Notes: a model not told the origin generated them from the letters alone. A DNA stretch of 64,000 nucleotides from Octopus sinensis (GCF_006345805.1 NW_021833229.1:16846-80845), one strand, 5' to 3'; counted from the stretch's first letter, positions 7,631-61,519 are shown. Translations and numbers: made by a program.

Positions 7631-8820
7631 ATATATATGTATATATATATATATGCATACGTATTTATTTATTTATCACCCGACAAGATACATATGCACC
7701 ACCAGATACTCCTGAACCAGTTTTTTTATGTGTCCCACAGGAGGAGTCGATGCTAGATGTGTCGAAACAATTGTAGTGATTAATAATATATTCTTGTATA
7801 TTCCATCTTCTGTCTTTCATTTGTCATTTCTATATATGTATATATATATAAGTATATATGTATGTATATATATATGTGTGTGTGTGTATGTATATATATA
7901 TATGTGTGTTTGTGTATATATATATATATGTATGTATGTATGTATGTATATATGTATATATATATGTATATATGTATGTATATATATATGTATATATGTA
8001 TGTATATATATATGTATATATGTATGTATATATATATGTATATATATATGTATATGTATGTATATATATATGTATGTATATATATATGTATGTATATATA
8101 TGTATATATATATATGTATGTATATATATGTATATATATATATGTATGTATATATGTATGTATATACATATGTATGCATATATATATGTATGTATATACA
8201 TATGTATGCATATATATATGTATGTATATGTATGTATGCATATATATATGTATGTATATGTATGTATGTATATGTATATGTGTGTATATATATATGTGTG
8301 TGTGTGTATATATATATGTGTATATATATGTGTGTATATATATATATGTGTGTGTATATATATATGTGTATATATATGTGTGTATATATATATATGTGTA
8401 TATATATGTGTGTATATATATATATATGTGTATATATATATGTGTGTGTATATATATATGTGTGTGTATATATATATGTATGTATCTATATATATATATG
8501 TAGGTATATGTGTATGTATATGTCGGTGTATATATATGTAGGTATATGTATATATATGTAGGTATATGTATATATATATATATGTAGGTATATGTATATA
8601 TATATATATATGTAGGTATATGTATATATATATATATATGTAGGTATATGTATATATATATATATATGTAGGTATAATGTATATATAATATATGTAGGTA
8701 TATGTATATATATATATGTAGGTAATGTATATATATATATATATATTATGTAGGTATATGTATATATATATATATATGTAGGTATATGTGTATATATATA
8801 TGTAGGTATATGTATATATA
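7390..8820. repeat. 1.4-kb (TA)n/(TATG)n array, with a gtaggtatatgtata(ta)n higher-order unit at 8490-8820
   Basis: Directly visible. Confidence 0.95.
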
Positions 8821-10750: not shown

Positions 10751-11444
10751 GATGACTGATACACACATGTTTATGTAGAAAATGCCAATTCAGTTATCCA
10801 TTTTTGTTTTTTGGCTTATCTCTTTCTGCCAAACCATAGGAATTTGGAAGAAAGCAGTGACTGTGCTAAGAGAGTTGGAAAAGAAATTTGAGGTAGAAAA
10901 AAACAGACAGATGGATAGATAGGCAGGTAGGCAAATAGATAGATAGATGGAAGGTTGACAAAGTGAAAGGGAAAGAGAGAGCAGCAGCTAGCATGGGAAA
11001 AAGCACTCAAGCAAGCAGAAAGTGAAATATGATTTTGATTTTGATTTTTCCAGTTTCAGCTAATGAGCTGTGGCCATGCTGGGGCACCGCCATATAAGGA
11101 AGTTATGAAGAAAAGTGAAAGTAAAAGATAGCATGAATAAGAAAGGAACAGTGTAAAGAAGAAAGACTGAACTCTGGATTACAGCGTGTAAACTAGAATA
11201 CAATTAAAAGAGGTGCACTAATCAAAGTAAGAATTGTAGAGGGTGGAACAAACGACAGTGATAGAGTTAGAGAAATTCACCTTCAATTAAATTTTGTGTG
11301 TGTGTATGATAAGTTATTTTAAAACAATAACTGCTAAGCGTTTAATAATTATGTTCATACTCTAAGTTACAAATAGTGTGAAGATTAAATTTTCTTCTAT
11401 TGGCTACTTCTCCTCCTCCTTTATCTTCTTCTTCTTATTATTAT

Positions 11445-12669: not shown

Positions 12670-15600
12670 ATTTTGTTTGGCTGTGCTTCACATTGGCTTC
12701 TGAAGGTTTGTTCAATTTCACAGAAATTATTTATGTACTGTTGATCATTTTTTGTTGAAGCTTTTGGCTGTTCTTTCGCCTGTTTGGAAATATGGCGGTG
12801 ACAACGCCCACCAACAGATCCCAAAAAAGAAGGTTGTGGGGAAAATCTCATACCTCTGCAAGTTTGCGCAAAAACAAGCACAACAACAGTAACAGTTTCG
12901 ACAATGTTTTTAGTAACACAAACAACAACAGAAGCGTCAATAACAATAGCAATAACTATGGCATCAACAGTAATAACATCAGTGGGGAGTGCAACAGCCG
13001 CAACGACAGCAAAAATAAATGACGAAATAAGTGGTGGAGCGATTCTACGAGTAAGCAATCGCTCACTGGAATGGGGCGAAATCATGTCACCAAGGCAAAA
13101 CCGTTCGGAGGCGTGGAAGTCCTCTTCAAGAGCAAAACCTTTGCGTTGAAGCACCCCATAAGCAATAGGAAGCTCACCCTCTAGCAACTTATTTAGGGAG
13201 AAAGACCTGTTGCGTCAAGATAGAATTCCACCTGGGTTGGACATCTTGTGGTTGTTAGCTTATGTCATTTTAGAAGGAAGTGGTACATATCTTGAAGTAA
13301 AACAAGCGGGAGTTTTGGTATGGAACGACATTGAAGATCCTCCTCCAGATAAAATCGGAGGAGGTAGAAAAGCTCTCAAACCTTAGCCCCCACCACCCAC
13401 CCAACGGAATAAATTTTCGTGTTGCAGTTGAGGGTAGAAAGATACTGTACCACTTGTGCGATACAGAAGGCCAGTTCAGAGCTTTCTGTCCCCACACCAC
13501 CACAGCTCCAACAACAACATGCAGTCGTTATATCAGTAGCAACAACAGGGAAGGACAGCAGCAGCACCAACAACAACAGCACTAGCAACGGCAACAAAGG
13601 TGAACGGAACCATAGCCCGCCACCCAGGAAAATATCTCTACTACAACTACTACTACTACCACTCTCCTCCTACTCTCTCTCTCTCTTGCCCTCTCTCTCT
13701 CTCCCCCCTCTCTCTCTCTCTCTTCCCACCTTTTTTCAGACACGTACATGGAACACATACAAGTATAATTCTATGGCCTTTCGATTGAATCTTTCTGACA
13801 AGAAATAATAATTAGCTTGCAAGGAAAATAACGAAAATAAATAAATAAAATAAATAAAAATTTTACGAATATACATCTGTTTTGAACAAGCCAAACAACC
13901 ACAACAGCACCAACGAAACCATACCTACACCAAACACTGACAAATCTGCAATAACTCAAACGCCACAAACAACACTCACCTCTCCTTTTTATCTTTCAAA
14001 CAGCAAGGTGGTTCTGAGAGTGTGCTGTATAAAAATGCATGTGGACTGGGGTCACCCTGGAAGCAGGTTCACCCGCTCAATAACCTAAGGTCACTAGGTT
14101 TGGACGTGATAGCCGTCGGCGAGACAAGGATTTCTGACACAGTGTACTGGGTCCCATCTTTGATGATTTTGAGATCTTCGCATTTCTTATTTGGTCCGGA
14201 ATGAGGTAGCGGAGTAATGGTACCGTTTCGGAAAGGCCTTGATCTTGATATAAGGCCGACCTTCCTGGACCGGGAAGGTAAGATAATGGTCCTGGACTTG
14301 AATAGTAGCGAAGGTGGGGGCCTTTAGACAAGTCGCCAAGTAAGCCCTGACTAGAGCAAGGCGGGAGATCGGGGATTTCTTTAAAAATCTAAAGGTTTTC
14401 TTTGTAACGTCCTACTGCCCTGTGCTGGTGAGTGATTCGAACGGCATCCTAGATGCACATCTGGATTGTGTGAAACTAGCTGATAGGAGAGCTAGATGTA
14501 AAATCCTCGCAGATTTGTTCAGTCGTTTCTAGCTGGTTGACAGGTACCGACTGTATCTTCTGAATGTACCAATGTGAACGTGGCAAACATCGTTGTTTCA
14601 TCCAAATCGAGTCCGTACAGTCGACCATGATAAGCTTTCGTAGACAAAGAACCGGTTACTGAAAACAGAATGCGCCTTTTCCCGCTCGCAAAGTTTACAA
14701 CAGTCGGATCCAAGAACAAGTAAAGAGGGAGTTGACAGAAGAAATCATCATCAACTGATGGTGGTTAGCCATGAAAAAAGAGTTTATTAGATTAGAGTCG
14801 ATTGAATTTAGAAAGGAAATAGTGGTAGATAATTCTAGAATAGTGGTTGAACTAGCTAGTAACCCAGAAAAAGCGCTTAGAAAAGGCATTGTAACTGAAT
14901 GCTGGCAGCGAAATTTTCCGTTGACCGATTCTTTAATTCAAGATTGTATTATTACACGAAAGTTGTATTATTAGAGATAGGGCATGTGATTTAAGGTATG
15001 AAAGAACGAAAGCTGTTCGATGGATTCGGGGGGTAGAGGTGCATCGCAACAACAAACCCACAATTCGGTCTTCGACGTATCAGAGTAGAGTTGCGTTGTA
15101 GCCGATTCCAAACAGATGTGTACAGCCTTATCAGTGGAATTTCGCTCATATGTTTGGGTGGTCCATAGACCGGAGATACTTTGAACTTACCATAAACTTA
15201 CCTTGATGGTCTGCCACGATTCTCGACTGGAGACTCGAAGTTCTGCGAAATACCGACGAAATACGGGAAGCGACGACAGGCTGCTCAACAGACAAGTCGA
15301 CGGGTCCATATGATCTGTCTCACAAGCTCTATATTTATGTGCTAGACTCGTTCGGGTGTCTCTTGGAAAATGCAACTGGCAACAGAACAGATTCTAACTC
15401 CCGCAATAGGTGGTGCAATGCTGCTGAGAAACAACCTGAACATGAGGGATGATTTTAAGAACTTCAGGCCCTGCTAAACGCAGAGTTGGAGATTTTGACC
15501 AAGTTCTTAGCTAAAAGGTTGGCACTTGTCGACGATACTCTGGTGGATGAGACACAGATATGGGCTGTACCCCATATATCTATCCACGGCAATCTAATCA

Positions 15601-15844
15601 TCGCGATATATCATAGAAAGAGTAAGTAAAGAACCTGGCATGTGTGGGCCCTTCATTCATTTCAACAGTCGAAAGCTTTTGATAGAGTCAGCCATCATTT
15701 AGCGGCTGTCTTGAAGGCGGTAGGTTTTGCGTCCATCTCCAGAAGGTAATCGTGATATTTGTTCGGAGGTCAGATTAAATGACCATCGGTCGGAATCGTT
15801 CAGTATCATGCGACTGGTCCGACAAAGGTGCAATCTCTCTCTCT

Positions 15845-15941
<97 letters not shown>

Positions 15942-17060
15942 TTTAGAGCTACTATTGCAGAAGTTGGAGCATACCGCGAGAAACAGAATGCATAGGTAGG
16001 CAATGTCACCGTAATATTGTCGGACACAAAACACATCAAGTTGATTTGTACAGTTCTAAGGGAATACGATACAGTGACAGGAATAAAGATTAACCAAAAG
16101 TCGTTGGGCATACAGCTCGGCACTTAGAGAGGTAGGTCCATACTGTCCAACAGCGTTGATGGGCACTGGACGGACAGACCTGTTACATTGCTTGGGATTT
16201 GGTCTGGTCCAGTCCTCCAGGTGGACAATTACTGGAAAGCGGTGACGAATAGGGTGACTACTCTCACCCAGATATGAGCTGAAAGGAAACTATTTCTGAA
16301 GGGTTAGGCGAAAAATGAAAATACCTACATAGAATCGTCATCTAGTACTGACTACCCGTTGTGCCTTGTCTCGCTTCATAGCTGACCAGAATGGAACGCT
16401 TGTTCGTTCCCTTTTTGTGGAAGGGTCAGACGGCCCATTTGCTACCGAGATCTGCTGTGTGTAAGACTAAGCATGCCGTGGCTGATGAGACACGGACATA
16501 CACTGAGGCTATGACATCTCTAGCTTTTCCTTGATACCGTGTGTTAGACGCGCTTTTCCGTAGCTCGTGTCTTTGACAGAACTGTTTGTGAGGCACGTCT
16601 GTAAACAGCTCGTCTCTTTAACGGAGATGAAGTCATGGTATAAGGAGATATCAAAACTGAGCTTCTGGCACCTAGAATGTCGTCAAGGGCTACCTCAACC
16701 AGTGGGGCACTAGGATCGTTCCATTTTAACAATATATAGAGGATTAGGGGCGGGTAAGTGAGTCGACGAACTGACTAGTCTGTTCCGGAGAACTTTCCGG
16801 TGGGGGGTCTATCATGGATAATTTCCAGATGTTCTTGGCCCGGTAGTGCTACCGCAGGACACTACTGTTTCAGGATAAGCTCTACAGGCACGGACGTGCT
16901 GTCAGATAAGCTTGTCCATGGTGCGCACAGAACTACGAAACCATGCACTCGTTCAATGTCTTGGCAGTACTGACTTCTGGAGTAACGTCGAACAGCTGCT
17001 GACGAGTGTAGGACGAATCCGTCTGGCTATGATGCTCCTCCACTACTTCTGCACGTGATC
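12670..17060 (+). mobile_element. Degraded Tx1/L1-clade LINE (ORF1 ~12792-13600; EN-RT ORF2 ~14000-17060)
   Basis: MKILLQIKSEEVEKL...FRVAVEGRKILYHLCDTEGQFRAFC aligns by eye to ORF1 at 59820-60449. EN motif NLRSLGLDVIAVGETR and RT pieces (KAFDRVSHH, WLMRH) are present, with many stops and frameshifts. Confidence 0.85.
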
Positions 17061-17244
17061 AGAGATGCACATATCACCACCCACCAAGGGACATGGTCAA
17101 CTGGTTAAGGTCAAACAACTGACAAGGAAATCTGTGGTATTGAGTAGAATATTTGCTGTAGCCCATCTCTTTTTCTACCAAGACAAAACATGTACATGAT
17201 AACACATCCAATCAATTAAGGTGAGAAGCCATGAGAGCTAGTGC

Positions 17245-17725
17245 CTAAGGCGGTGAGCAGAACTTTTAGCACGCCGGGCGAAATGCTTGGCGGTATTTCT
17301 CCCGTTGCCTACGTTCTGAGTTCAAATTCCGCCGAGGTTGACATTACCTTTTATTGTTTCGAGATCGATAAATTAAATACCAGTGAAGCACTGGGTCGAT
17401 GTAATCGACTCAACCTCGGCCCCAAAACTGATGAAGCAAAATTTGAAATCATCATCATTATTATTATTATTATTATTATTGAGTGAGAGAGCAGTGCAGG
17501 CCATCAAAGTGATACTGGGGCAAAATATACGAAGCCAGTATACCCACCTACCCGTCTGATAAGGGTATACCAGGCACATGCATCACAACCATATGTGCGC
17601 GACATAGTGATCTCATATCAAGATAAACAGTGCATGACCTTGTAGGTGAGGCCCAGTTAGAATTTTCTTCAGGTCGAGTAGCCCACCCTACCCAAAAGGT
17701 CTCTGAATACGGGTTGTTTAAGGAT
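17245..17725 (+). mobile_element. Family-1 SINE followed by a family-4 repeat
   Basis: gttctgagttcaaattccgccgaggt head, (ATT)n, then the family-4 sequence. Confidence 0.8.
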
Positions 17726-20606: not shown

Positions 20607-20618
20607 TGGCTAATAAAG

Positions 20619-20652
<34 letters not shown>

Positions 20653-33018: not shown

Positions 33019-33690
33019 CATGAAGAGAAGAAATATACTGTATAAACATAAAATTACTGAACAAGCTATACCTGACATAAAAGAACAGCTAAAGCGAGAT
33101 ATCCCCGCCAAAGCATAAAGAATCCACCGGTATGAAAAACACCAACGTTTCTTTGAACAAAACAAACAGTTCAATTCCTACCTCAAAAGGTTCTACCAAG
33201 AACTTAGCAAAAATAAAATACAGATCAATGCAGCACCAACAGCAGAAGCGGAATAATTTTGGAAAGGATTATGGTTAGTGATGGAACAACCTCAGAGAAT
33301 ATCTAACAAAACAATGAACAGAGCACCTGAACAACTCTGGACCCCTATAACAACTGAAGAGGTCACCAAGGCACTGAAAAAACTAAGCAATTGGAAGGCA
33401 TCCAGGCGCGACAAGATCCCCAACTTCTGGTTAAAATACCTAACAGGAAAACATAAAACGCTGGCTGAGAAACTTAATGAAATACTAGCAGAGCCAGAGA
33501 TAATGCCTGAATGACTCACGGAATGACATACAGAAAATAGCACTACTAGGTATCGTACACATCCTACGTAAAACACTTTCACTGCAGTGAAAATAAGAGC
33601 ACCACAACAAACTACAGTGCATATCCAAGGCACACAGAGCTGCGATCGGAGTGCAGTGAAAGCACGTGATAAAAATAAGACTTTAGCTGC
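32622..33690 (+). mobile_element. Two R4/Dong-like LINE remnants (3' end with (ATG)n tail; internally deleted copy)
   Basis: ETIPIIIGALGM and IALLGTAHIL 3' motifs; LWTPITTEEVTKALKKLSNWKASRRDKIPNFWLK (RT domain 0/1). Confidence 0.85.
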
Positions 33691-34301: not shown

Positions 34302-34759
34302 ATTCCCAAAACATTTTAATCTATGAACATTGTCAAATGTACTTTAAATGTACATAACAGCAAACACTTTTTACTGTCGTTTTAAGATCATACTATTATC
34401 TAACATCAAATTAATCTTTTTTTAAACTTCTAAATTTCTTATGTTTTTACTGACACTCTCTCCGACAATACTCTGTGCAAAATCAAAAATATGGTATCAA
34501 AGTCGTAACACCGACTTAAACTTCTAATTTGTTATCTCTTGAGGTATCTGGATGAGATTTGGAGTGAAATTGTACAAATACAAAGCAAAAGCCAAACATA
34601 ATACAACAACAACAACAACAATCATTTCTTTATTAACCTCAAGGGGTTACATTAAGAAAATATTAGGGACAGCACAGGACAAAACAAAAAATGTGAGTGT
34701 GTGTGTAAGTATGTGTTGTGAGGATTTTGCGTGTAAACAAGACCAATCTTTTTTTAAAA

Positions 34760-35370
34760 TGAACAATGTGTGATCCCCGATAGGGAGGCGACGTTCGAAG
34801 GGCTGCTCATGGAAAACCCCATAAAATACAATGGGTACCCTGACTTTTGGGACAGGTACATTTTTCTCTCCTTTTTTCCAACTACAGGCGTATGCTCAGG
34901 GCAGGCCTGTTCACTCACACCATTCTTGCAACTTTCATCCACCTTTCAGCAAACTGGCTTGAAGACAACACTTTTCTCTCTACCCTTATTTTCCTTTTCA
35001 GGTGAAACTTGAAGTAGTTGATCAGGGATTGGCCGAAGAGAAAAGTGTTTGTCTTCAGCCCCTTCAATCTCGTCCACCATACAACCTATTTCGCCATGGC
35101 CACCAGGCATACAAAAACAGCTTTTCCTTCCCGATTTCAACTGTTGGCACTTCCATGCCTGAAGAGCTTGTCTCGAACAGGCAATGTCTGCCTGTAGCGC
35201 TGTCATGCCAAAGACTTTGGGAAATTCTCCATGCTCTTCGACCCGAAAGTCCTCCGGAAGAGAGCACTCAAACTTTTCTCGTCCCTTGGCCATCGTCGCT
35301 CATTTCCTCAATGAGCCTCCTATAGAAATCTTGAGTTGTTTTCCCGCTAACGGTTTTGTCCAGCGGGTAC
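34760..35370 (-). pseudogene. Tx1-like LINE 3' fragment
   Basis: GKTTQDFYRRLIEE and VVWWTRLKGLKTNTFLFGQSLINYFKFHLKRK parallel the C-terminus of ORF2 at 55943-56783. Confidence 0.75.
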
Positions 35371-45149: not shown

Positions 45150-45545
45150 TTATTTCTTTATTGCCTGCAAGGGGCTAAACATAGAGGTGACAAACAAAGA
45201 CAGACAAAGGGATTAAGTCGATTACATCGATCTCAGTACGTAACTGGTGTTTAATTTATCTACCCCGAAAGGATGAAAGGCAAGGTCGACCTCGGCGGAA
45301 TTTGAGCTCAGGGCGTAGCGGCAGACGAAATACCTATTTCCTTACTACCCACAAGGGGCTAAACACTGAGAGGACAAACAAGGTCAGACAAACGGATTAA
45401 GTCGATTATATCGACCCCAGTGCGTAACTGGTACTTATTTAATCGACCCCGAAAGGATGAAAGGCAAAGTCGACCTCGGCGGAATTTGAACTCAGAACAT
45501 TTCGCCGAGCGTGCTAACGTTTCTGCCAATTTGCCGCCTTCACAC
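45150..45545 (-). mobile_element. Two family-1 SINEs
   Basis: gaaaggatgaaaggcaaagtcgacctcggcggaatttga occurs twice. Confidence 0.82.
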
Positions 45546-55037: not shown

Positions 55038-55104
<67 letters not shown>

Positions 55105-55105
55105 T

Positions 55106-55138
<33 letters not shown>

Positions 55139-55217
55139 GTTAATAAAATAGAATATATGCATATATATAAACATATATGTACGTACCTACCTCTACATGT
55201 ACTATACACACACCACA

Positions 55218-55249
<32 letters not shown>

Positions 55250-55255
55250 TATATT

Positions 55256-55288
<33 letters not shown>

Positions 55289-55311
55289 ATTTATATATAT
55301 ATAATATTTAT

Positions 55312-55350
<39 letters not shown>

Positions 55351-55404
55351 ATTTATATATATATATATTTATATATATATATATTATATATTTTATATAA
55401 TATA

Positions 55405-55449
<45 letters not shown>

Positions 55450-55602
55450 ATATATCGTGACGCATATTTGCCATTTGAATATGGCTTACCCATAAGGGTG
55501 GATGCTACTGTAGTTTGTAGCCCCAGGAAGATATCTCCTCCAGCTGGCTATAGACACACTATCTGTGTACACTCAGTATTTGTGAAGGGGAGTCATCCTC
55601 CC

Positions 55603-55685
55603 CGTCTTCAACACATGATACACACGTACCCGAGTTTCAAGGTGTTTACCTTTCATCAGCGTGTGACAATCATGGTTGTCGACGA
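55603..55685 (-). ncRNA. Type I hammerhead ribozyme, family A, intact canonical core
   Basis: CACACG-CUGAUGA-AAGGU AAAC ACCUU-GAAA-CUCGGG-UA^CGUGUG. Stem I extends through AUGAU/AUCAU, CAAC/GUUG and CGUC/GACG; cleavage predicted between 55627 and 55626. Confidence 0.9.
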
Positions 55686-55942
55686 ATTTCTTTATTACGA
55701 TTATAAAATCATTACATAGAAGGACAATACAGGACATACATACAAAAAACAGTTAAGTGGTTCGATTAAAAATTTTCCATAATATATGGATTATTCCTTA
55801 TACAAAATTTATATTTAAATTGTCCTTTGCATTGACTAATAGAACATTACAACATTACATAGCTTGAGATCTTACCGATATATTTTAAACCCCGGCAACC
55901 TATAAGGCCCCGCAGCTTTTCTTTCCTCTCCTCCATCCATAG

Positions 55943-58900
55943 TTAAGCTGGGTTTCTGACACCCACCTTTTTTGCCACTTCCTTCCATCTTTTTTCATAT
56001 ACACCTCGTGGTAAGATCTTCTTTTCCAGCCCCATTTTGCTCTTCAGATGATATCTGAAGTAAGTGAGCAAGCCGGGCCTGAGACAAAGGATCCTATTGA
56101 GACTCCTTCCATTCTTGTACGCCACATGCATTCTTTTACTACTGTAACCGTGCAGTGAAAACATGCCTCACCTTCCTTCGAGAGTCCAGTTGGCGGTATC
56201 ATCTTAATCATAGACTCAGCTGACAGCTGTACTCGTCCCAGATGCGATAACACGTGTTCTGCGTAACTTATCAAGTCTGACAACTTCCGACAGTGTACAA
56301 AAGCGTGCTGGATGGTTTCATCGTCCAACCCGCATCTTGGACACGTCGGTGGCACTGAAATTCCGTGCCGCGATAACTTCTCGCGAACAGGTAAAGCATT
56401 CCTATAACACTGCCAGGCCAGTTATCCAAATACCCCGTCCTGAAAGTCTTTTTAAACAGGTTGGTAAGCTGGTCTTCATCAAACCCCAGAGCCCTTCCTA
56501 GGACGTCGTCGTTCTTTGCCTCTACCAGCCTGCTATAAAATACCGAGGTGGTATTTCCGCAGCCGGCCTTGCCCGCCTTGTGGATCAGCGTGAGTGCCTG
56601 TCGGCACTCCTTTTGCCATAAAGTCAGATTCCGTCTTTTGATGTGACCGGGTTTAAAATTCACTAAGGAAGCCGGTCTCGGGAAAAATTCCCCTGCCAGC
56701 GGACTCCACACCTTATCACCCTCCAGGTGGTGCCAGAGATGCTTCAGCCTCAACGCATGCCTGCGCATCATCAACCAAGGCATTCATAACCCACCCTTTA
56801 ACGGTTCCTGGCAGCAAACGGAGCGCCTCACAAGTGGCTTTCCTCCCTTCCACAAAAAGCGGAAAAGGATTCGCTCCAACTTGCTAAGCCATGAATCGGG
56901 GCAAGGGACAGCGGTCAGGCGGTAAGTGATTACAGATGCAATGAACATCTGTGCCACCTCCGCCTTTCCTTTCAAGGACAGAGACCTTCCGGACCAGGTC
57001 CGTACTATGGCCTCCACCTTGTCCGTCACCTCACTCCAATTCCTCTCCGTTTGGGAGTCTGACCCAAACCAAACTCCTAGCAACTTAACAGGACCATCCG
57101 TTATCGACTTGCTCCTCCAGGTGCCGAGGCGCAAGCCAACCGACTTGTCCTTGTTAACCCTTGCTCCTGCCACCGCCTCGTATCCTCTGATAGCATCTTC
57201 TACACAAGGTAGCTCGGCCTCATTGGACACGATGAGGGTGACGTCATCCGCATAAGCAGTAACCGTCCTCCCACCTCCGATCTCATCCGGGTTACTTCCC
57301 AGCCTTTCCAACTTTCGCAGCAATGGCTCGAGAGCCAACACGTACAAAAGTAGTGACAAGGGGCACCCTTGACGAACTGAACATTCGATCGAAAACGGTT
57401 CCGTTAGGTAACCGTTTATCTGGACGGTGGACTTGATGCCGCTATACATAGCGGAGATCCACCCGCGAAATTCAGGGCCCAGTCCAGATACTTATGGTCT
57501 ACCCTATCGAACGCTTTACTTCGGTCTAAATGGACCATTACCCCGCCCTTGCCGGTTAATTTACCCACCCTATCTAAGGTGTAGCGTATAAGGTGAAGAT
57601 TGTCCTGGATCGACCTGCCTGAAATTGCACATGTCTGTGCTTTCCCTACAAGTTTCTCCACGACAATCGTCAACCTTTTTGCCAACACCTTGGCCAAAAT
57701 CTTTAACTCTACATTAAGTAGAGTTATGGGCCTGTAATTACTAATGTTATCCCCCTTGCTCGGGTCTTTCTGGATTAGCGTCACCACTCCCCGGCTTACA
57801 GAACTGGGAATTCTCCCATTCTGCGCAGTTCGCGTAGACGCTGCCCATATTCCCCGAACAAGTCCGGCATACTTTGGTAAAACTCGTAGGGCAGACCATC
57901 CAACTCCGGCGACTTCTCCCCGGCGCATCCGGCCATTACCCCCTCTATCTCCGCGGGAGTGATCGCTCCTTAACAGCACTCCACCTCTCGCACCGAGAGC
58001 CGCGGTCCGCCGGCTAGGAAGTCCTTTAAGGCCCTCCCCCGCTCCGGCGCCACACCACCCCCGAACGCGCGGGCGAAATGCTGGTGAAGAAACTTTTGCA
58101 TCTCCTCCTGTCCATAGATCTTTTGTCCCTGTTCGTCAGTTAAAGACTTGATTGAAGCTTTGTTACCTCTCTGACTCTCCACTCGACGGGTCCATCCGGC
58201 AACGTTAATACCTTCTCGTTTCCCAGCTCAAACTCTGCAACCTTCGTGTTTGGAGTTAAGGTGACGGTACAATACCATCCTTGCCGCCATCACTCCGGAT
58301 GCAGAGCCAGCTTCCATTGCCTTGTTTAGATTCTTAACTAAATCGCCCTCTATCCTAGACCTATCTAACCTTAGCTGATTGCTAAATCTAATGGACTCTG
58401 AACGAATGGCTCTTTTGAGGGAGTGCCACCATCTATTGTTAATGATGTGCCACACAATGCCCTCTGTACTAACACCTTAATCCGGGTACGGAAGTCTTCA
58501 CAATTCAAAATAGACTTGTTCAGCTTCCAGTACCCGGGTCCCTGTCTATGGCACTTATCTAATTGCACCCTACAAGTCAAAAATTTGTGATCCGTGTAAG
58601 GCACAATGTGAAACTGTGGACAACTAAACGTATCCTTATCTCTTTCCTAACGAATATCCTATCTATATACGATCTGTGTGAGCCGTCGTTGTTACTCCAC
58701 GTCCACTGTGGAACGCTCGGCTCATCCAGTCGATAACGGTCCACTAGATCAAAGCTCTCTAGTAGACCCTTGAGGCTAGGGTTCCCCTTCCTATTGGTTG
58801 AGCCAACACTGTCGACCCGCGCTTCAAGGACAGTGTTAAAGTCCCCTACTAAGAATACCGTTTTCGACGTCGCTAAAAAGTGCTCCAGATTCCGAAAAAA

Positions 58901-59256
58901 ACCCGCCTGCCTACACTCATTCGGAGCGTAGACAGCTACCAACCTGAAGGACTGTTTACTTACGTGGGTCACATCCAGAACGACCAGCCTGCCTTCTGGG
59001 TCCAGAAAGACAGTACTTACCTGCAAGTCCAAGCTCTTCCTGATAAGGACTGCCACGCCTCTTCCTCTTCCTTGGCTAGGAGAAATAAATCTCGAAACCA
59101 TTTAGAAGAGGCGAGAGAGAACGCTTGGGCCCCGTTCATCTTGGACTCGGTTACAATAGCTACGTCCACTCCGTATGTCGTGAGGTCGTTCAGGAAACAA
59201 ATTTGTTTCCATTTCGACCCCATTCCACGCACATTCACACAACCCAGCTTTGCCAT
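55943..59256 (-). CDS. LINE ORF2 (APE endonuclease, reverse transcriptase, C-terminal zinc knuckle), frameshifted
   Basis: MAKLGCVNVRG, VTESK, VYAPN, VGDFN, SYIDR, TDHK; YRPITLLN, KAFDRVDH, VRQGCPLS, AYADD; CPRC...ETIQHAFVHC. Split over several frames with small deletions. Confidence 0.9.
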
Positions 59257-59281
59257 TGTCGGAGAGAAAAAAAACAAAAAC

Positions 59282-60716
59282 TTACGGTTGGGACAGGGAG
59301 CATGACAGTTTAAATCTGCCTGCTTCCCCTTCTTCCTCCCTTTTGGTCGTAGCTGCAGGGCTCTTAACCGGCGTTGCCATCGGGCTCTGGGTAAGTGTGG
59401 TTGCCGGGGTTATAATGAGTTTACCCTCCAGTATTTCATTCGTTACATCTCTGATGAGATTATTCTTTAAATGTTCTTGTAGTGTTTTTTTTCCTTCCAC
59501 TCGTCTTCCTTTATTTTTGCAAAGCGAGTGGTTGATTTTATGTCTGTAGACTTACTGAATAGTTTAAATTTTGAAAATTTGAAATACTTGTACACCCTAT
59601 CGTTCTTCTCGTCAAATGCTATAATCTTTTCATTTTTTTTTATCAATTTTTTCAAATCTTGTTTTATGGGGAGGGGCTTGGCGAACTGTGTTCCAATGAA
59701 TACAGTGCCGTGGGGGTAGGGCTGGGGAATTTGTTTTGTATGTATCTCTGCGGTGTTCGCTGATTTTTTCTTTGTTTGGGGAGGGGAGTCCAGGGTGTTA
59801 TCTTTTTTTCTTTTGTGTGTCACCTGTGTATATTCCATCTGTTCATTTTCATCTTCCGTTTCGGTTCCTTTCCTTGTCGCAGTCTTGGGTTCTTTTTCCA
59901 CCTTTTCTTTTTCAGTGTTTGAAGCACTTTGAGGAGGGGCTTCGTTAATTTTCTTTTTTTTATGCAGTTTGAGCGGACGTGACCCTTTTCGCCACATTTG
60001 AAGCACCTAGGTCTGTGCCCCTCCACTGACACTCTCATTGAAGTTCCCTCCTCATTAAATACCCTATCGGGTAAGTTTTCTAGTATTTTATTTTCTGCTT
60101 GAACGAGGAGTTCTAGCGCTTGTCCTTTCCAGTGCACCTCCTCTTTCCTTCTCATCTGCAGAATTGAAACTTCCCGCTCTACGTTGTGCAGGACTGCCGC
60201 TGCTACCCACATTATATCATACCCTCTTGGTATATCCTCTACATGTAGTTTGGCTGTTCTTTTCCCCATATACGAAGGTAGCAACATGATATCCTCACTT
60301 TTCAAGGTCATTGATGACACCTCTCTTGCCACATCAGCCGAGTCGAAATGTGCTTCAACGGTAGCGCTGCGAGCACCTCGAACAACGTGGCGAATTTTGT
60401 TCCACACCGGGGACAAGCACTTTTCCACTATCTCGTTCTTGACATCCATTATTTTTTTTTCTTTGTTGCTATAAACTTTGTATACAACTGTCTTGCCTTT
60501 ATTTCCTGTACCTTCGCTTGCGGCGGTACCAGTTTAATTTCATTGCCTTCCGTTTTTACCAAGTTCCGGTATTCGAATAACTGTTAATCTTGAATCTACA
60601 TCCGTTACGGTTCCGCCCACTGCGGCCGAAAAAGACTGTTTTTTGACTTCGGTATCCTTTTGTTCACCTTTTCCCATCACGGGAAAGTCACTACTCGACG
60701 CCAAGTCGAACTCCAT
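59282..60716 (-). CDS. LINE ORF1 (gag-like, CCHC), frameshifted
   Basis: ATG at 60716 (MEFDLASSSDFP); CFKCGEKGHVRSNC; K/E-rich tail. Confidence 0.82.
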
Positions 60717-61462
60717 TTCTCAAATTATGAGAACAAATGTTTAAAAAAAAAAAGTTACCTCGAAGGTAATGACAATGTTTAAACACAGAATTTTCCGCCC
60801 CGTAGGGCGAAAATTACTGTTACACAACGGACAACTGTTCAATTCACGAGTAAACACAAACAACGACGAACAAAAAATACGAACTCACTCAACAAAAAGG
60901 CAGCAAAATTCTCAAAACGCAGATGAAAGAGGGGTCCCTAGACGAATAACAATCATGGTTGTCGACGAGAAGTCAGATCCCCTCACAAATACATATACTT
61001 TTTCCAGTGTCGATTGACACTGATATTGAAAAAGTGAAATCAAACAATGATAAATCTCAGAGCGAGTTATAAACAGTAGCGGTAACACATCGTGACGCAT
61101 ATTTGCCATTTGAATATGGGTTACCCATAGGGTGGATGCTACTGTAGTTTGTAGCCCCAGGAGATATCTCCTCCAGCTGGCTATAGACACACTATCTGTG
61201 TCCTCTCATCTCGTATTGTGAAGGAGAGTCATCCTCCCCGTCTTCAACACATGATACACACGTACCCGAGTTGGGATGATGACTCCCCTTCACAAATACT
61301 GAGAGGACACAGATAGTGTGTCTATAGCCAGCTGGAGAGATATCTTCCTGGGGCTACAACTACAGTAGCATCCACCCTTATGGGTTAGCCATATTCAAAT
61401 GGCAAATATGCGTCACGATGTGTTACCGCTACTGTTTATAACTCGCTCTGAGATTTATCATT

Positions 61463-61519
<57 letters not shown>

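What the first reader, a model, noticed from the sequence alone, without database searches (positions are those of the whole stretch)
55603..60968. Tx1-clade LINE inserted precisely into a hammerhead ribozyme stem: candidate ribozyme-targeting retrotransposon
Seen: the 20-bp TSD (sense UCGUCGACAACCAUGAUUGU) is exactly the distal 5' strand of stem I and ends 6 nt before CUGAUGA. The LINE is full length and co-oriented, and the TSD restores the downstream ribozyme completely. The target is quasi-palindromic (ACAATCATGGTTGT; GTCGAC). Established: the Tx1 clade includes APE-encoding families specific for multicopy targets (U2 snRNA, 5S rDNA, tRNA arrays, microsatellites, other transposons). Inference: this family may target retrozyme or Penelope hammerheads as a safe, transcribed, multicopy haven, a parasite of a parasite. 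I know of no description of such targeting. One insertion cannot prove specificity.
Basis: partly seen in the sequence, partly recalled or inferred. Interest (0 to 1): 0.92.

Follow-up and report, generated by a model that had tools for sequence, protein, structure and literature searches.

The report
Dead LINE inside a hammerhead repeat
A mutated, full-length L1/Tx1-type retrotransposon sits inside the outer stem of a hammerhead-ribozyme motif carried by a small Penelope-like repeat, but one insertion cannot show that this LINE family seeks out ribozymes.

Summary
A perfect 20-bp target-site duplication (55666-55685 and 60949-60968) brackets a 5263-bp minus-strand LINE. The LINE has a CCHC-type ORF1 and an ORF2 with APE, RT and zf-RVT domains. 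The duplicated sequence is the internal loop plus distal 5' arm of stem I of a co-oriented type I hammerhead motif, which remains complete downstream.

The host is a 353-nt, low-GC, strongly self-pairing repeat with Penelope-like tandem and inverted architecture, lodged in (TA)n. That fits an animal non-LTR retrozyme.

Corrections:
- The LINE is full length only in extent; ORF2 carries at least 7 frameshifts and 3 stop codons.
- Rfam does not recognise the hammerhead.
- Tx1 membership could not be tested directly, though human L1 ORF2p is the closest solved relative.

The targeting inference stays untested. No second copy of this family was found in the window or in any reachable collection. 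The LINE's sister clade does contain one strictly site-specific family (10 of 10 loci) and tandem LINE arrays. Other elements in the window with the same 12-nt tail sit in (CAT)n and (TTG)n, and one SINE sits in a non-repeat site.

I put sequence-directed insertion at about 45% and functional use of the ribozyme at about 10%.

The parts
55686..60948 (-). LINE body, 5263 bp, L1/Tx1-type. It is full length in extent but non-functional.
   Evidence: It is bounded by the 20-bp duplication. At least 7 frameshifts and 3 stops are shown. It is the only copy in the window.
60949..60968 (-). Upstream (5') copy of the 20-bp target-site duplication, sense TCGTCGACAACCATGATTGT.
   Evidence: exact match, 0 expected by chance.
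55666..55685 (-). Downstream (3') copy of the duplication. It forms the internal loop and distal 5' arm of hammerhead stem I.
55621..55665 (-). Type I hammerhead core. Proximal stem I is CACACG/CGUGUG. CUGAUGA lies at 55653-55659. Stem II is AAGGU/ACCUU with loop AAAC. GAAA follows. Stem III is 2 bp with loop UCGG. The predicted cleavage site lies between 55627 and 55626.
   Evidence: descriptor hit; 0.05 expected per shuffled window. Rfam is negative.
55600..55620 (-). Distal 3' arm of stem I (U-AUCAU-G(U)GUUG...GACGGG), which pairs with the duplicated sequence.
   Evidence: minimum free energy -32.8 kcal/mol, z = -3.95.
55686..55697 (-). LINE 3' terminal motif TAATAAAGAAAT, which contains AATAAA. 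There is no poly(A) tail.
   Evidence: The same 12-mer ends a LINE at 34624, an element at 20622 and an Octopus sinensis LINE in L017.
55943..59256 (-). ORF2, broken. APE lies at about 58549-59256, RT at about 57068-57754 and zf-RVT at about 56284-56421.
   Evidence: Pfam E-values: Exo_endo_phos 3.4e-13, RVT_1 2e-12 and 3e-12, zf-RVT 1e-10.
59470..60716 (-). ORF1 region, also interrupted, with a CCHC zinc knuckle at about 59964-60008.
   Evidence: zf-CCHC, E = 1.1e-4.
60969..61273 (-). Sense-strand host repeat upstream of the LINE. It begins inside a truncated hammerhead (AACUCGGGUA|CGUGUG) and is part of the single full 353-nt monomer.
   Evidence: direct repeat of period 353, 93% identity. 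The monomer fold has z = -6.0 and GC of 43%.
55456..55620 (-). Second, partial sense monomer downstream of the hammerhead, ending at (TA)n.
61274..61462 (+). Inverted, 5'-truncated copy of the same repeat. It forms the palindrome 61046-61462.
   Evidence: 88% inverted match. The architecture is as described for Penelope-like elements (PMC8557442).
55072..55455 (.). (TA)n microsatellite flanking the host repeat on one side.
61462..61518 (.). (TA)n microsatellite flanking the host repeat on the other side.

Best explanation
**Order of events (shown)**
- A small non-autonomous Penelope-like or retrozyme-type repeat first inserted into a (TA)n microsatellite. Its monomer is 353 nt and carries a type I hammerhead.
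- An L1/Tx1-type LINE later inserted into it by target-primed reverse transcription.
- The bottom strand was nicked 26 nt upstream of CUGAUGA and the top strand 6 nt upstream. This duplicated the 20 nt that form the internal loop and distal arm of stem I.
- Because the duplication carries that arm, the ribozyme motif downstream of the LINE stays whole.
- The LINE copy has since decayed.

**Most likely cause (inferred)**
- The site was chosen by the DNA-sequence preference of the LINE's endonuclease, as in its site-specific relatives.
- On this reading the repeat is a multicopy landing site, and the ribozyme is a passenger rather than the feature recognised.
For: **The insertion**
- An exact 20-bp duplication brackets an element with defined ends.
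- The host repeat has tandem plus inverted architecture inside (TA)n. This matches published Penelope-like structure and microsatellite bias (PMC8557442).
- Monomer size, GC content and self-pairing match animal retrozymes (PMC7229834).

**The preference**
- The window LINE and P0001 are sister, with 100% support, to a clade containing P0137, P0003 and P0005.
- All 10 P0137 loci lie in one ~193-bp repeat, mostly at one position, with a ~17-bp duplication and head-to-tail arrays.
- P0003 forms tandem arrays. P0005 lies in an LTR retrotransposon with a 22-bp duplication.
- The nick site, GTCGACGA/GAAGTC, is not T-rich, although hundreds of bp of (TA)n lie within 0.5 kb.
- The LINE has a defined 3' terminus and no poly(A) tail.
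- Two other elements in the window with the same 12-nt tail abut (CAT)n and (TTG)n, as microsatellite-specific Tx1 families do (PMC4494074).
- The only copy of the 20-nt site in the window is occupied.
Against: - There is only one insertion of this family. No other copy was found in the window or in any reachable collection.
- The site-specific relatives share only about 39% identity and form a sister clade rather than enclosing this LINE.
- Their targets contain no hammerhead.
- A SINE with a closely similar tail (CAATAAAGAAAT) sits at a non-repeat site.
- The genome is repeat-rich, so landing in a repeat is common. The host repeat is about 1.3% of the non-LINE window.
Confidence: 0.45

Rival explanations
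1. Chance insertion. The LINE family has no preference, or a different one, and this copy landed in an abundant repeat by accident. It is striking only because the repeat carries a ribozyme motif.
For: - There is a single copy.
- Elements with the same or a closely similar 3' tail have four different flank types in this window.
- The Octopus sinensis relative in L017 lies in an unrelated ~31-bp minisatellite.
- With thousands of LINE and SINE insertions per genome and a repeat share near 1%, some chance hits are expected.
- The finding was selected after the fact.
Against: - The nick site is not A/T-rich despite adjacent (TA)n.
- The sister clade contains demonstrably site-specific members.
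- Many Tx1-clade families show target preference (PMC4494074).
Confidence: 0.4
2. Functional ribozyme exploitation. The family homes to hammerhead stem I so that read-through transcripts are cut by the regenerated ribozyme 59 nt past the LINE end. That would give a defined 3' end carrying target sequence able to anneal to the nicked target.
For: - The LINE and hammerhead are co-oriented.
- The duplication regenerates an intact motif immediately downstream.
- The LINE has no poly(A) tail.
- From general knowledge: R2 elements use an HDV-like ribozyme on co-transcripts, and R1-type elements use read-through target sequence for precise priming.
Against: - No relative examined abuts a hammerhead.
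- The hammerhead has a 2-bp stem III and an A-U pair closing stem II, so it may cleave poorly as a monomer (compare PMC7229834).
- Rfam does not recognise it.
- No expression data are available, and the copy is dead.
Confidence: 0.1
3. The 'hammerhead' is a chance or decayed look-alike, so the LINE simply sits in an ordinary satellite-like repeat.
For: - Rfam gives no hit at E<=10 even on 81 nt.
- A control minimal hammerhead in L005 scores 29 bits, E = 3e-4.
- The core is present only once, so no covariation can be assessed.
- Stem II closes with A-U rather than the usual G-C.
Against: - All core nucleotides and the three helices are in the correct register. The descriptor gives 0.05 hits per shuffled window.
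- The context is exactly that of Penelope-like or retrozyme repeats.
- ACUCGGGU in stem III is self-complementary, as expected for hammerheads that act as dimers.
Confidence: 0.15

Closest known systems
Tx1-clade LINEs that target other transposons: Tx1L in Tx1D (Xenopus), Tx1-Mar in Mariner-N4_AMi, and Tx1-8_Crp and Tx1-4_AMi in LTR retrotransposons (PMC4494074)
   Same: It encodes an APE-type endonuclease and is nested in another mobile element. It has a defined 3' end without poly(A) and a long target-site duplication. Relatives show strict site specificity and tandem arrays.
   Different: The host would be a Penelope-like or retrozyme hammerhead repeat, a target I did not find described. 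Specificity is unproven for this family, and Tx1-clade placement was not tested against reference sequences.
Animal non-LTR retrozymes and Penelope-like pseudo-LTRs carrying type I hammerheads (PMC7229834, PMC8557442, bioRxiv 10.64898/2026.07.22.740005)
   Same: The host repeat has a 353-nt monomer, 43% GC and strongly self-paired RNA. Its type I hammerhead has a short stem III. It shows partial tandem plus inverted 5'-truncated copies and sits in a (TA)n microsatellite.
   Different: Only about 1.5 sense units are present and only one hammerhead core is intact. Rfam models do not score it. Expression, cleavage and circular RNA formation are untested.
R2 LINEs with an HDV-like ribozyme, which pair a site-specific LINE with a self-cleaving RNA (general knowledge)
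   Same: A LINE is co-transcribable with its target, with a self-cleaving RNA next to its boundary.
   Different: In R2 the ribozyme is encoded by the LINE at its 5' end. Here the ribozyme belongs to the host repeat and lies 3' of the LINE. No processing role has been shown.

Membership tests
Hammerhead ribozyme, type I | Conserved core: CUGANGA, GAAA, U16.1 and H17 in the correct order | tested here: met
   CUGAUGA...GAAAC...GUA|C at 55621-55665 on the minus strand.
Hammerhead ribozyme, type I | Three helices around the core, with stem I open | tested here: met
   Stem I has 6 bp, an internal loop and a distal helix. Stem II has 5 bp with loop AAAC. Stem III has 2 bp with loop UCGG.
Hammerhead ribozyme, type I | Match to curated covariance models (Rfam hammerhead clan) | tested here: not met
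   No hit at the gathering score or at E<=10. A control minimal hammerhead in L005 reaches 29 bits, below its gathering score.
Hammerhead ribozyme, type I | Compensatory base changes across copies | tested here: inconclusive
   The core occurs once in the window and no external copy was found.
Hammerhead ribozyme, type I | Self-cleavage at the predicted site | not testable with these tools
   Needs an in vitro transcription and cleavage assay.
Animal non-LTR retrozyme or Penelope-like non-autonomous repeat | Short (150-450 bp) low-GC repeat carrying a type I hammerhead, in tandem copies | tested here: met
   The period is 353 nt, the copies are 93% identical and GC is 43%. Only about 1.5 sense units are present.
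Animal non-LTR retrozyme or Penelope-like non-autonomous repeat | Partial tandem plus inverted 5'-truncated copy, with microsatellite insertion bias | tested here: met
   Palindrome at 61046-61462 and (TA)n on both sides. The features are as defined in PMC8557442.
Animal non-LTR retrozyme or Penelope-like non-autonomous repeat | Highly self-paired monomer RNA | tested here: met
   Circular fold of -117 kcal/mol against -86 +/- 5 for shuffles, z = -6.0.
Animal non-LTR retrozyme or Penelope-like non-autonomous repeat | Expressed as linear and circular RNA; sequence kinship to an autonomous Penelope-like element | not testable with these tools
   No transcriptome was available, and no Penelope-like ORF was found in the window.
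L1 superclade / Tx1-clade LINE | ORF1 with CCHC; ORF2 with APE endonuclease, RT and a C-terminal zinc-binding domain | tested here: met
   Pfam zf-CCHC, Exo_endo_phos, RVT_1 and zf-RVT. The best solved relative is human L1 ORF2p at 2e-56, against R2 at 1e-19.
L1 superclade / Tx1-clade LINE | RT phylogeny groups it with reference Tx1 elements (Repbase, RTclass1) | not testable with these tools
   No reference Tx1 sequences were available. The tree of database relatives carries no clade labels.
L1 superclade / Tx1-clade LINE | Target preference shown by many independent copies | tested here: inconclusive
   This family has n = 1. The feature is met for relative P0137, with all 10 loci in one target repeat.
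L1 superclade / Tx1-clade LINE | Hallmarks of target-primed reverse transcription (target-site duplication, defined 3' end) | tested here: met
   A 20-bp exact duplication and the terminal motif TAATAAAGAAAT.
L1 superclade / Tx1-clade LINE | Coding-competent (active) copy | tested here: not met
   At least 7 frameshifts and 3 in-frame stops in ORF2; ORF1 is also interrupted.

The most novel reading that the evidence does not exclude
A cephalopod-type Tx1-like LINE family homes to the stem I arm of retrozyme or Penelope-like hammerheads. Its target-site duplication rebuilds the ribozyme. The ribozyme then trims read-through LINE transcripts, leaving a 3' end that carries target sequence for precise re-insertion. 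This would be a parasite of a parasite that borrows its host's catalytic RNA.
Probability: 0.1. Interest if true: 0.75.

Novelty: new member of a known kind. Interest (0 to 1): 0.4.

Why it matters
If the family proves to prefer this site, it adds ribozyme-bearing retrozyme or Penelope-like repeats to the known targets of site-specific Tx1-type LINEs. It would also raise a testable question: can a LINE use a host element's hammerhead for transcript processing, as R2 uses its own HDV-like ribozyme? As it stands, this is one decayed, nested insertion in a repeat-rich genome. Both partners belong to known kinds, so the value lies in a cheap genome-wide check rather than in an established discovery.

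Tried and rejected
**Searches for further copies**
1. Rfam on the whole window, on 361 nt and on 81 nt found no hammerhead. I kept the motif on descriptor and context evidence, and I flag the failure.
2. blastn of the LINE and the host repeat against the window found only self-matches.
3. Three protein searches (stitched ORF2, a 221-aa RT ORF, the C-terminus) found no same-family copy.
   - L001, L013, L019-L022 and L023 end before the LINE 3' end.
   - L012 is an internal fragment.
   - L016 has only 145 nt beyond ORF2 and L018 ends at the contig edge, so neither gave a usable junction.
   - P0303 was not on record.
5. Exact-pattern DNA scans for the LINE tail and the hammerhead core in metagenome contigs (two scans) and genome contigs found nothing. 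Protein-based locus scans of genome and viral contigs also found nothing.

**Other checks**
6. I asked whether the P0137 target is a known RNA or a hammerhead. It is neither.
7. I looked for a shared cleavage motif between targets. GTCGAC in this window resembles GTTAAC in the P0137 target, and GTCGAC also occurs in L015. The spacing from the nick differs, so I treat this as coincidence.
8. I considered that the frameshifts might be assembly errors. I rejected this as a full explanation, because three in-frame stop codons lie within conserved sequence.
9. I looked for a Penelope-like ORF or other informative genes in the window. Pfam found none among ten large ORFs.


Full report
**Observation**

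The 20-mer ACAATCATGGTTGTCGACGA occurs exactly twice in the window, at 55666-55685 and 60949-60968. No shuffle reached even one match. The bases just outside the two copies differ, so the duplication is exactly 20 bp.

Between the copies lie 5263 bp (55686-60948) that encode a LINE on the minus strand:
- an ORF1 region with a CCHC knuckle;
- an ORF2 with an AP-type endonuclease, a reverse transcriptase and a zf-RVT domain.

**The LINE is dead**

Alignment to relatives P0001 and P0002 shows the reading frame changing at least seven times. Three in-frame stops fall within conserved sequence: TGA at 58230, TAA at 57972 and TGA at 56786. ORF1 is also interrupted. 'Full length' is therefore true of extent only.

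The element ends in TAATAAAGAAAT with no poly(A) tail and is joined directly to the duplication.

**The hammerhead**

The minus strand downstream of the LINE reads UCGUCGACAACCAUGAUUGU-CACACG-CUGAUGA-AAGGU-AAAC-ACCUU-GAAAC-UCGG-GUA|CGUGUG-U-AUCAU-GUGUUG.
- All core nucleotides of a type I hammerhead are in register.
- Proximal stem I has 6 bp, followed by an internal loop (UGU against U) and a distal helix.
- Stem II has 5 bp and stem III has 2 bp capped by a tetraloop.
- The duplication is the internal loop plus the distal 5' arm of stem I. In the minimum-free-energy fold, 16 of its 20 bases are paired there (z = -3.95).
- A descriptor search I wrote finds this site and yields 0.05 hits per shuffled window.
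- ACUCGGGU in stem III is self-complementary, as expected for short-stem-III hammerheads that act as dimers (PMC7229834).

Against this, Rfam gives no hammerhead hit at its gathering score, nor at E<=10 even on an 81-nt slice. A control minimal hammerhead from another genome (L005) scores 29 bits, E = 3e-4. Stem II closes with A-U rather than the usual G-C. The core exists only once in the window, so covariation cannot be assessed. I rate the motif as a genuine hammerhead at about 85%. Its activity is unknown.

**The host element**

Joining the flanks gives about 1.5 sense units of a repeat with a 353-nt period and 93% identity between copies. An inverted 5'-truncated copy precedes them, forming the palindrome 61046-61462 at 88% identity. 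The whole unit is embedded in (TA)n at 55072-55455 and 61462-61518.

The monomer has 43% GC. It folds far better than shuffled sequence: -117 against -86 +/- 5 kcal/mol, z = -6.0.

These traits match two published descriptions:
- Penelope-like elements show partial tandems, inverted truncated copies, hammerheads in pseudo-LTRs and a microsatellite bias (PMC8557442).
- Animal non-LTR retrozymes are 150-450-bp low-GC repeats with self-paired RNA (PMC7229834; bioRxiv 10.64898/2026.07.22.740005).

The LINE's duplication lies inside this repeat, so the LINE arrived second.

**What kind of LINE**

The best solved relative is human L1 ORF2p at E = 2e-56, against R2 proteins at about 1e-19. The element therefore belongs to the L1 superclade. 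No reference Tx1 sequences were available, so Tx1 membership remains untested.

Named relatives come from Octopus sinensis and a cuttlefish. O. sinensis loci hold LINE fragments at 66-75% nucleotide identity. The source is therefore probably a coleoid cephalopod. Both L1-Tx1 and Penelope elements are reported as abundant in that group (PMC8967140, PMC13282606).

**Is the family target-specific?**

No second copy could be found:
- none in the window;
- nothing closer than 54% identity full length, or 73-75% over short stretches, in three protein searches;
- no hits for the LINE tail or the hammerhead core in metagenome and prokaryotic genome contigs, and none in protein-based locus scans of genome and viral contigs.

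Indirect evidence in favour:
- In a tree, the window LINE plus P0001 is sister (100% support) to a clade of 15 relatives. The joint clade also has 100% support.
- Within that clade, all 10 loci of family P0137 sit in the same ~193-bp repeat, mostly at one position. They share a duplication of about 17 bp (TTAAGTTAACTCCAGCC), and several form head-to-tail arrays separated only by that duplication.
- L014 is another tandem LINE array.
- L015 lies in the 5' region of an LTR retrotransposon with a 22-bp duplication.
- An O. sinensis copy (L017, 50% amino-acid identity) lies in a ~31-bp minisatellite.
- The bottom-strand nick site here, GTCGACGA/GAAGTC, is not T-rich, although long (TA)n tracts lie within 0.5 kb.

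Indirect evidence against:
- None of those targets contains a hammerhead.
- Other retroposon ends in this window carry the same or a closely similar tail. One at 20611-20622 abuts (CAT)n. A LINE C-terminal copy ending at 34624 abuts (TTG)n. A SINE at 45152 abuts a non-repeat sequence.
- The host repeat is about 1.3% of the non-LINE window, so some chance hits are expected genome-wide.
- The case was picked after the fact.

**Weighing**

Many members of this lineage are target-selective, both here and in the literature (PMC4494074). I therefore estimate about 45% that this family prefers this site at the DNA level. I give about 40% to coincidence and about 10% to real use of the ribozyme, for example 3' trimming of read-through transcripts 59 nt past the LINE end. 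That last idea is mechanistically attractive, because the LINE and ribozyme are co-oriented, the ribozyme is regenerated and there is no poly(A) tail. It has no direct support.

**Novelty**

Searches of the paper library found no description of a LINE targeting hammerheads, retrozymes or Penelope-like elements. Tx1-type LINEs nested specifically in other transposons are well known. This is best filed as a new member of a known kind, with a cheap decisive test available in the source genome.

Noticed in passing
window 20611-20622 (+), 34624-34635 (-), 45152-45163 (-), 55686-55697 (-); L017 about 11064-11075: The 3' terminus TAATAAAGAAAT, often preceded by CCCTTGNGGN, ends several LINE and SINE copies here and an Octopus sinensis LINE. 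The SINE at 45152 has the one-mismatch variant CAATAAAGAAAT. This suggests a LINE/SINE partnership through a common tail. The flanks are (CAT)n, (TTG)n, a non-repeat sequence, the hammerhead repeat and a minisatellite.
   Followed up: partly
window 14034-17082 (+): A second, much more diverged L1-type ORF2 (28-40% amino-acid identity to the studied LINE). It appears to be interrupted or followed by a tRNA-like SINE at about 17240-17440 that ends in (ATT)n.
   Followed up: no
window 34885-35283 (-): A C-terminal LINE fragment closer to P0001 (60-69% identity) than to the studied LINE. It ends at 34624 directly on a (TTG)n microsatellite.
   Followed up: partly
window 45163-45500 (-): Two head-to-tail copies of a ~170-nt SINE. 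Its tail resembles the LINE tail (…CCCCTTGCAGGCAATAAAGAAAT).
   Followed up: no
L002-L011 (ENA ERZ21867824), LINE ends near 7750 and 14165: LINE family P0137 is strictly site-specific for a ~193-bp repeat of unknown type, with a duplication of about TTAAGTTAACTCCAGCC. It builds arrays of up to four head-to-tail copies. One copy in L006 uses a second site about 80 nt further into the same repeat.
   Followed up: yes
L005 14863-15300 (-): A tandem ~300-nt repeat with minimal hammerheads whose stem III is perfectly palindromic (ACAGAUCUGU). It starts directly at a (TA)n tract. Rfam Hammerhead_3 scores below threshold (29 and 21 bits). It is about 700 nt from a P0137 LINE but is not its target.
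   Followed up: partly
L015 781-802 and 7375-7396: A related LINE is inserted just upstream of the gag gene of an LTR retrotransposon. It has a 22-bp duplication, ACACCTGTGAACTGCGTGTCTT.
   Followed up: partly
L017 7700-9660 and 11076-20500 (Octopus sinensis CM016876.1): A 5'-truncated related LINE lies inside a long, degenerate ~31-bp minisatellite array.
   Followed up: partly
Proteins P0215 and P0303: Likely misannotations in public records. P0215, named 'secreted RxLR effector protein 78-like' in Octopus sinensis, is a LINE RT fragment. P0303, assigned to a Herbaspirillum MAG, is a LINE ORF2 C-terminus, probably from host contamination.
   Followed up: no
window 33349-33432 (+): A weak hit to my hammerhead descriptor (3-bp stem II, 44-nt loop 3), inside what reads like a degraded RT-coding stretch. 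It is probably a false positive.
   Followed up: no
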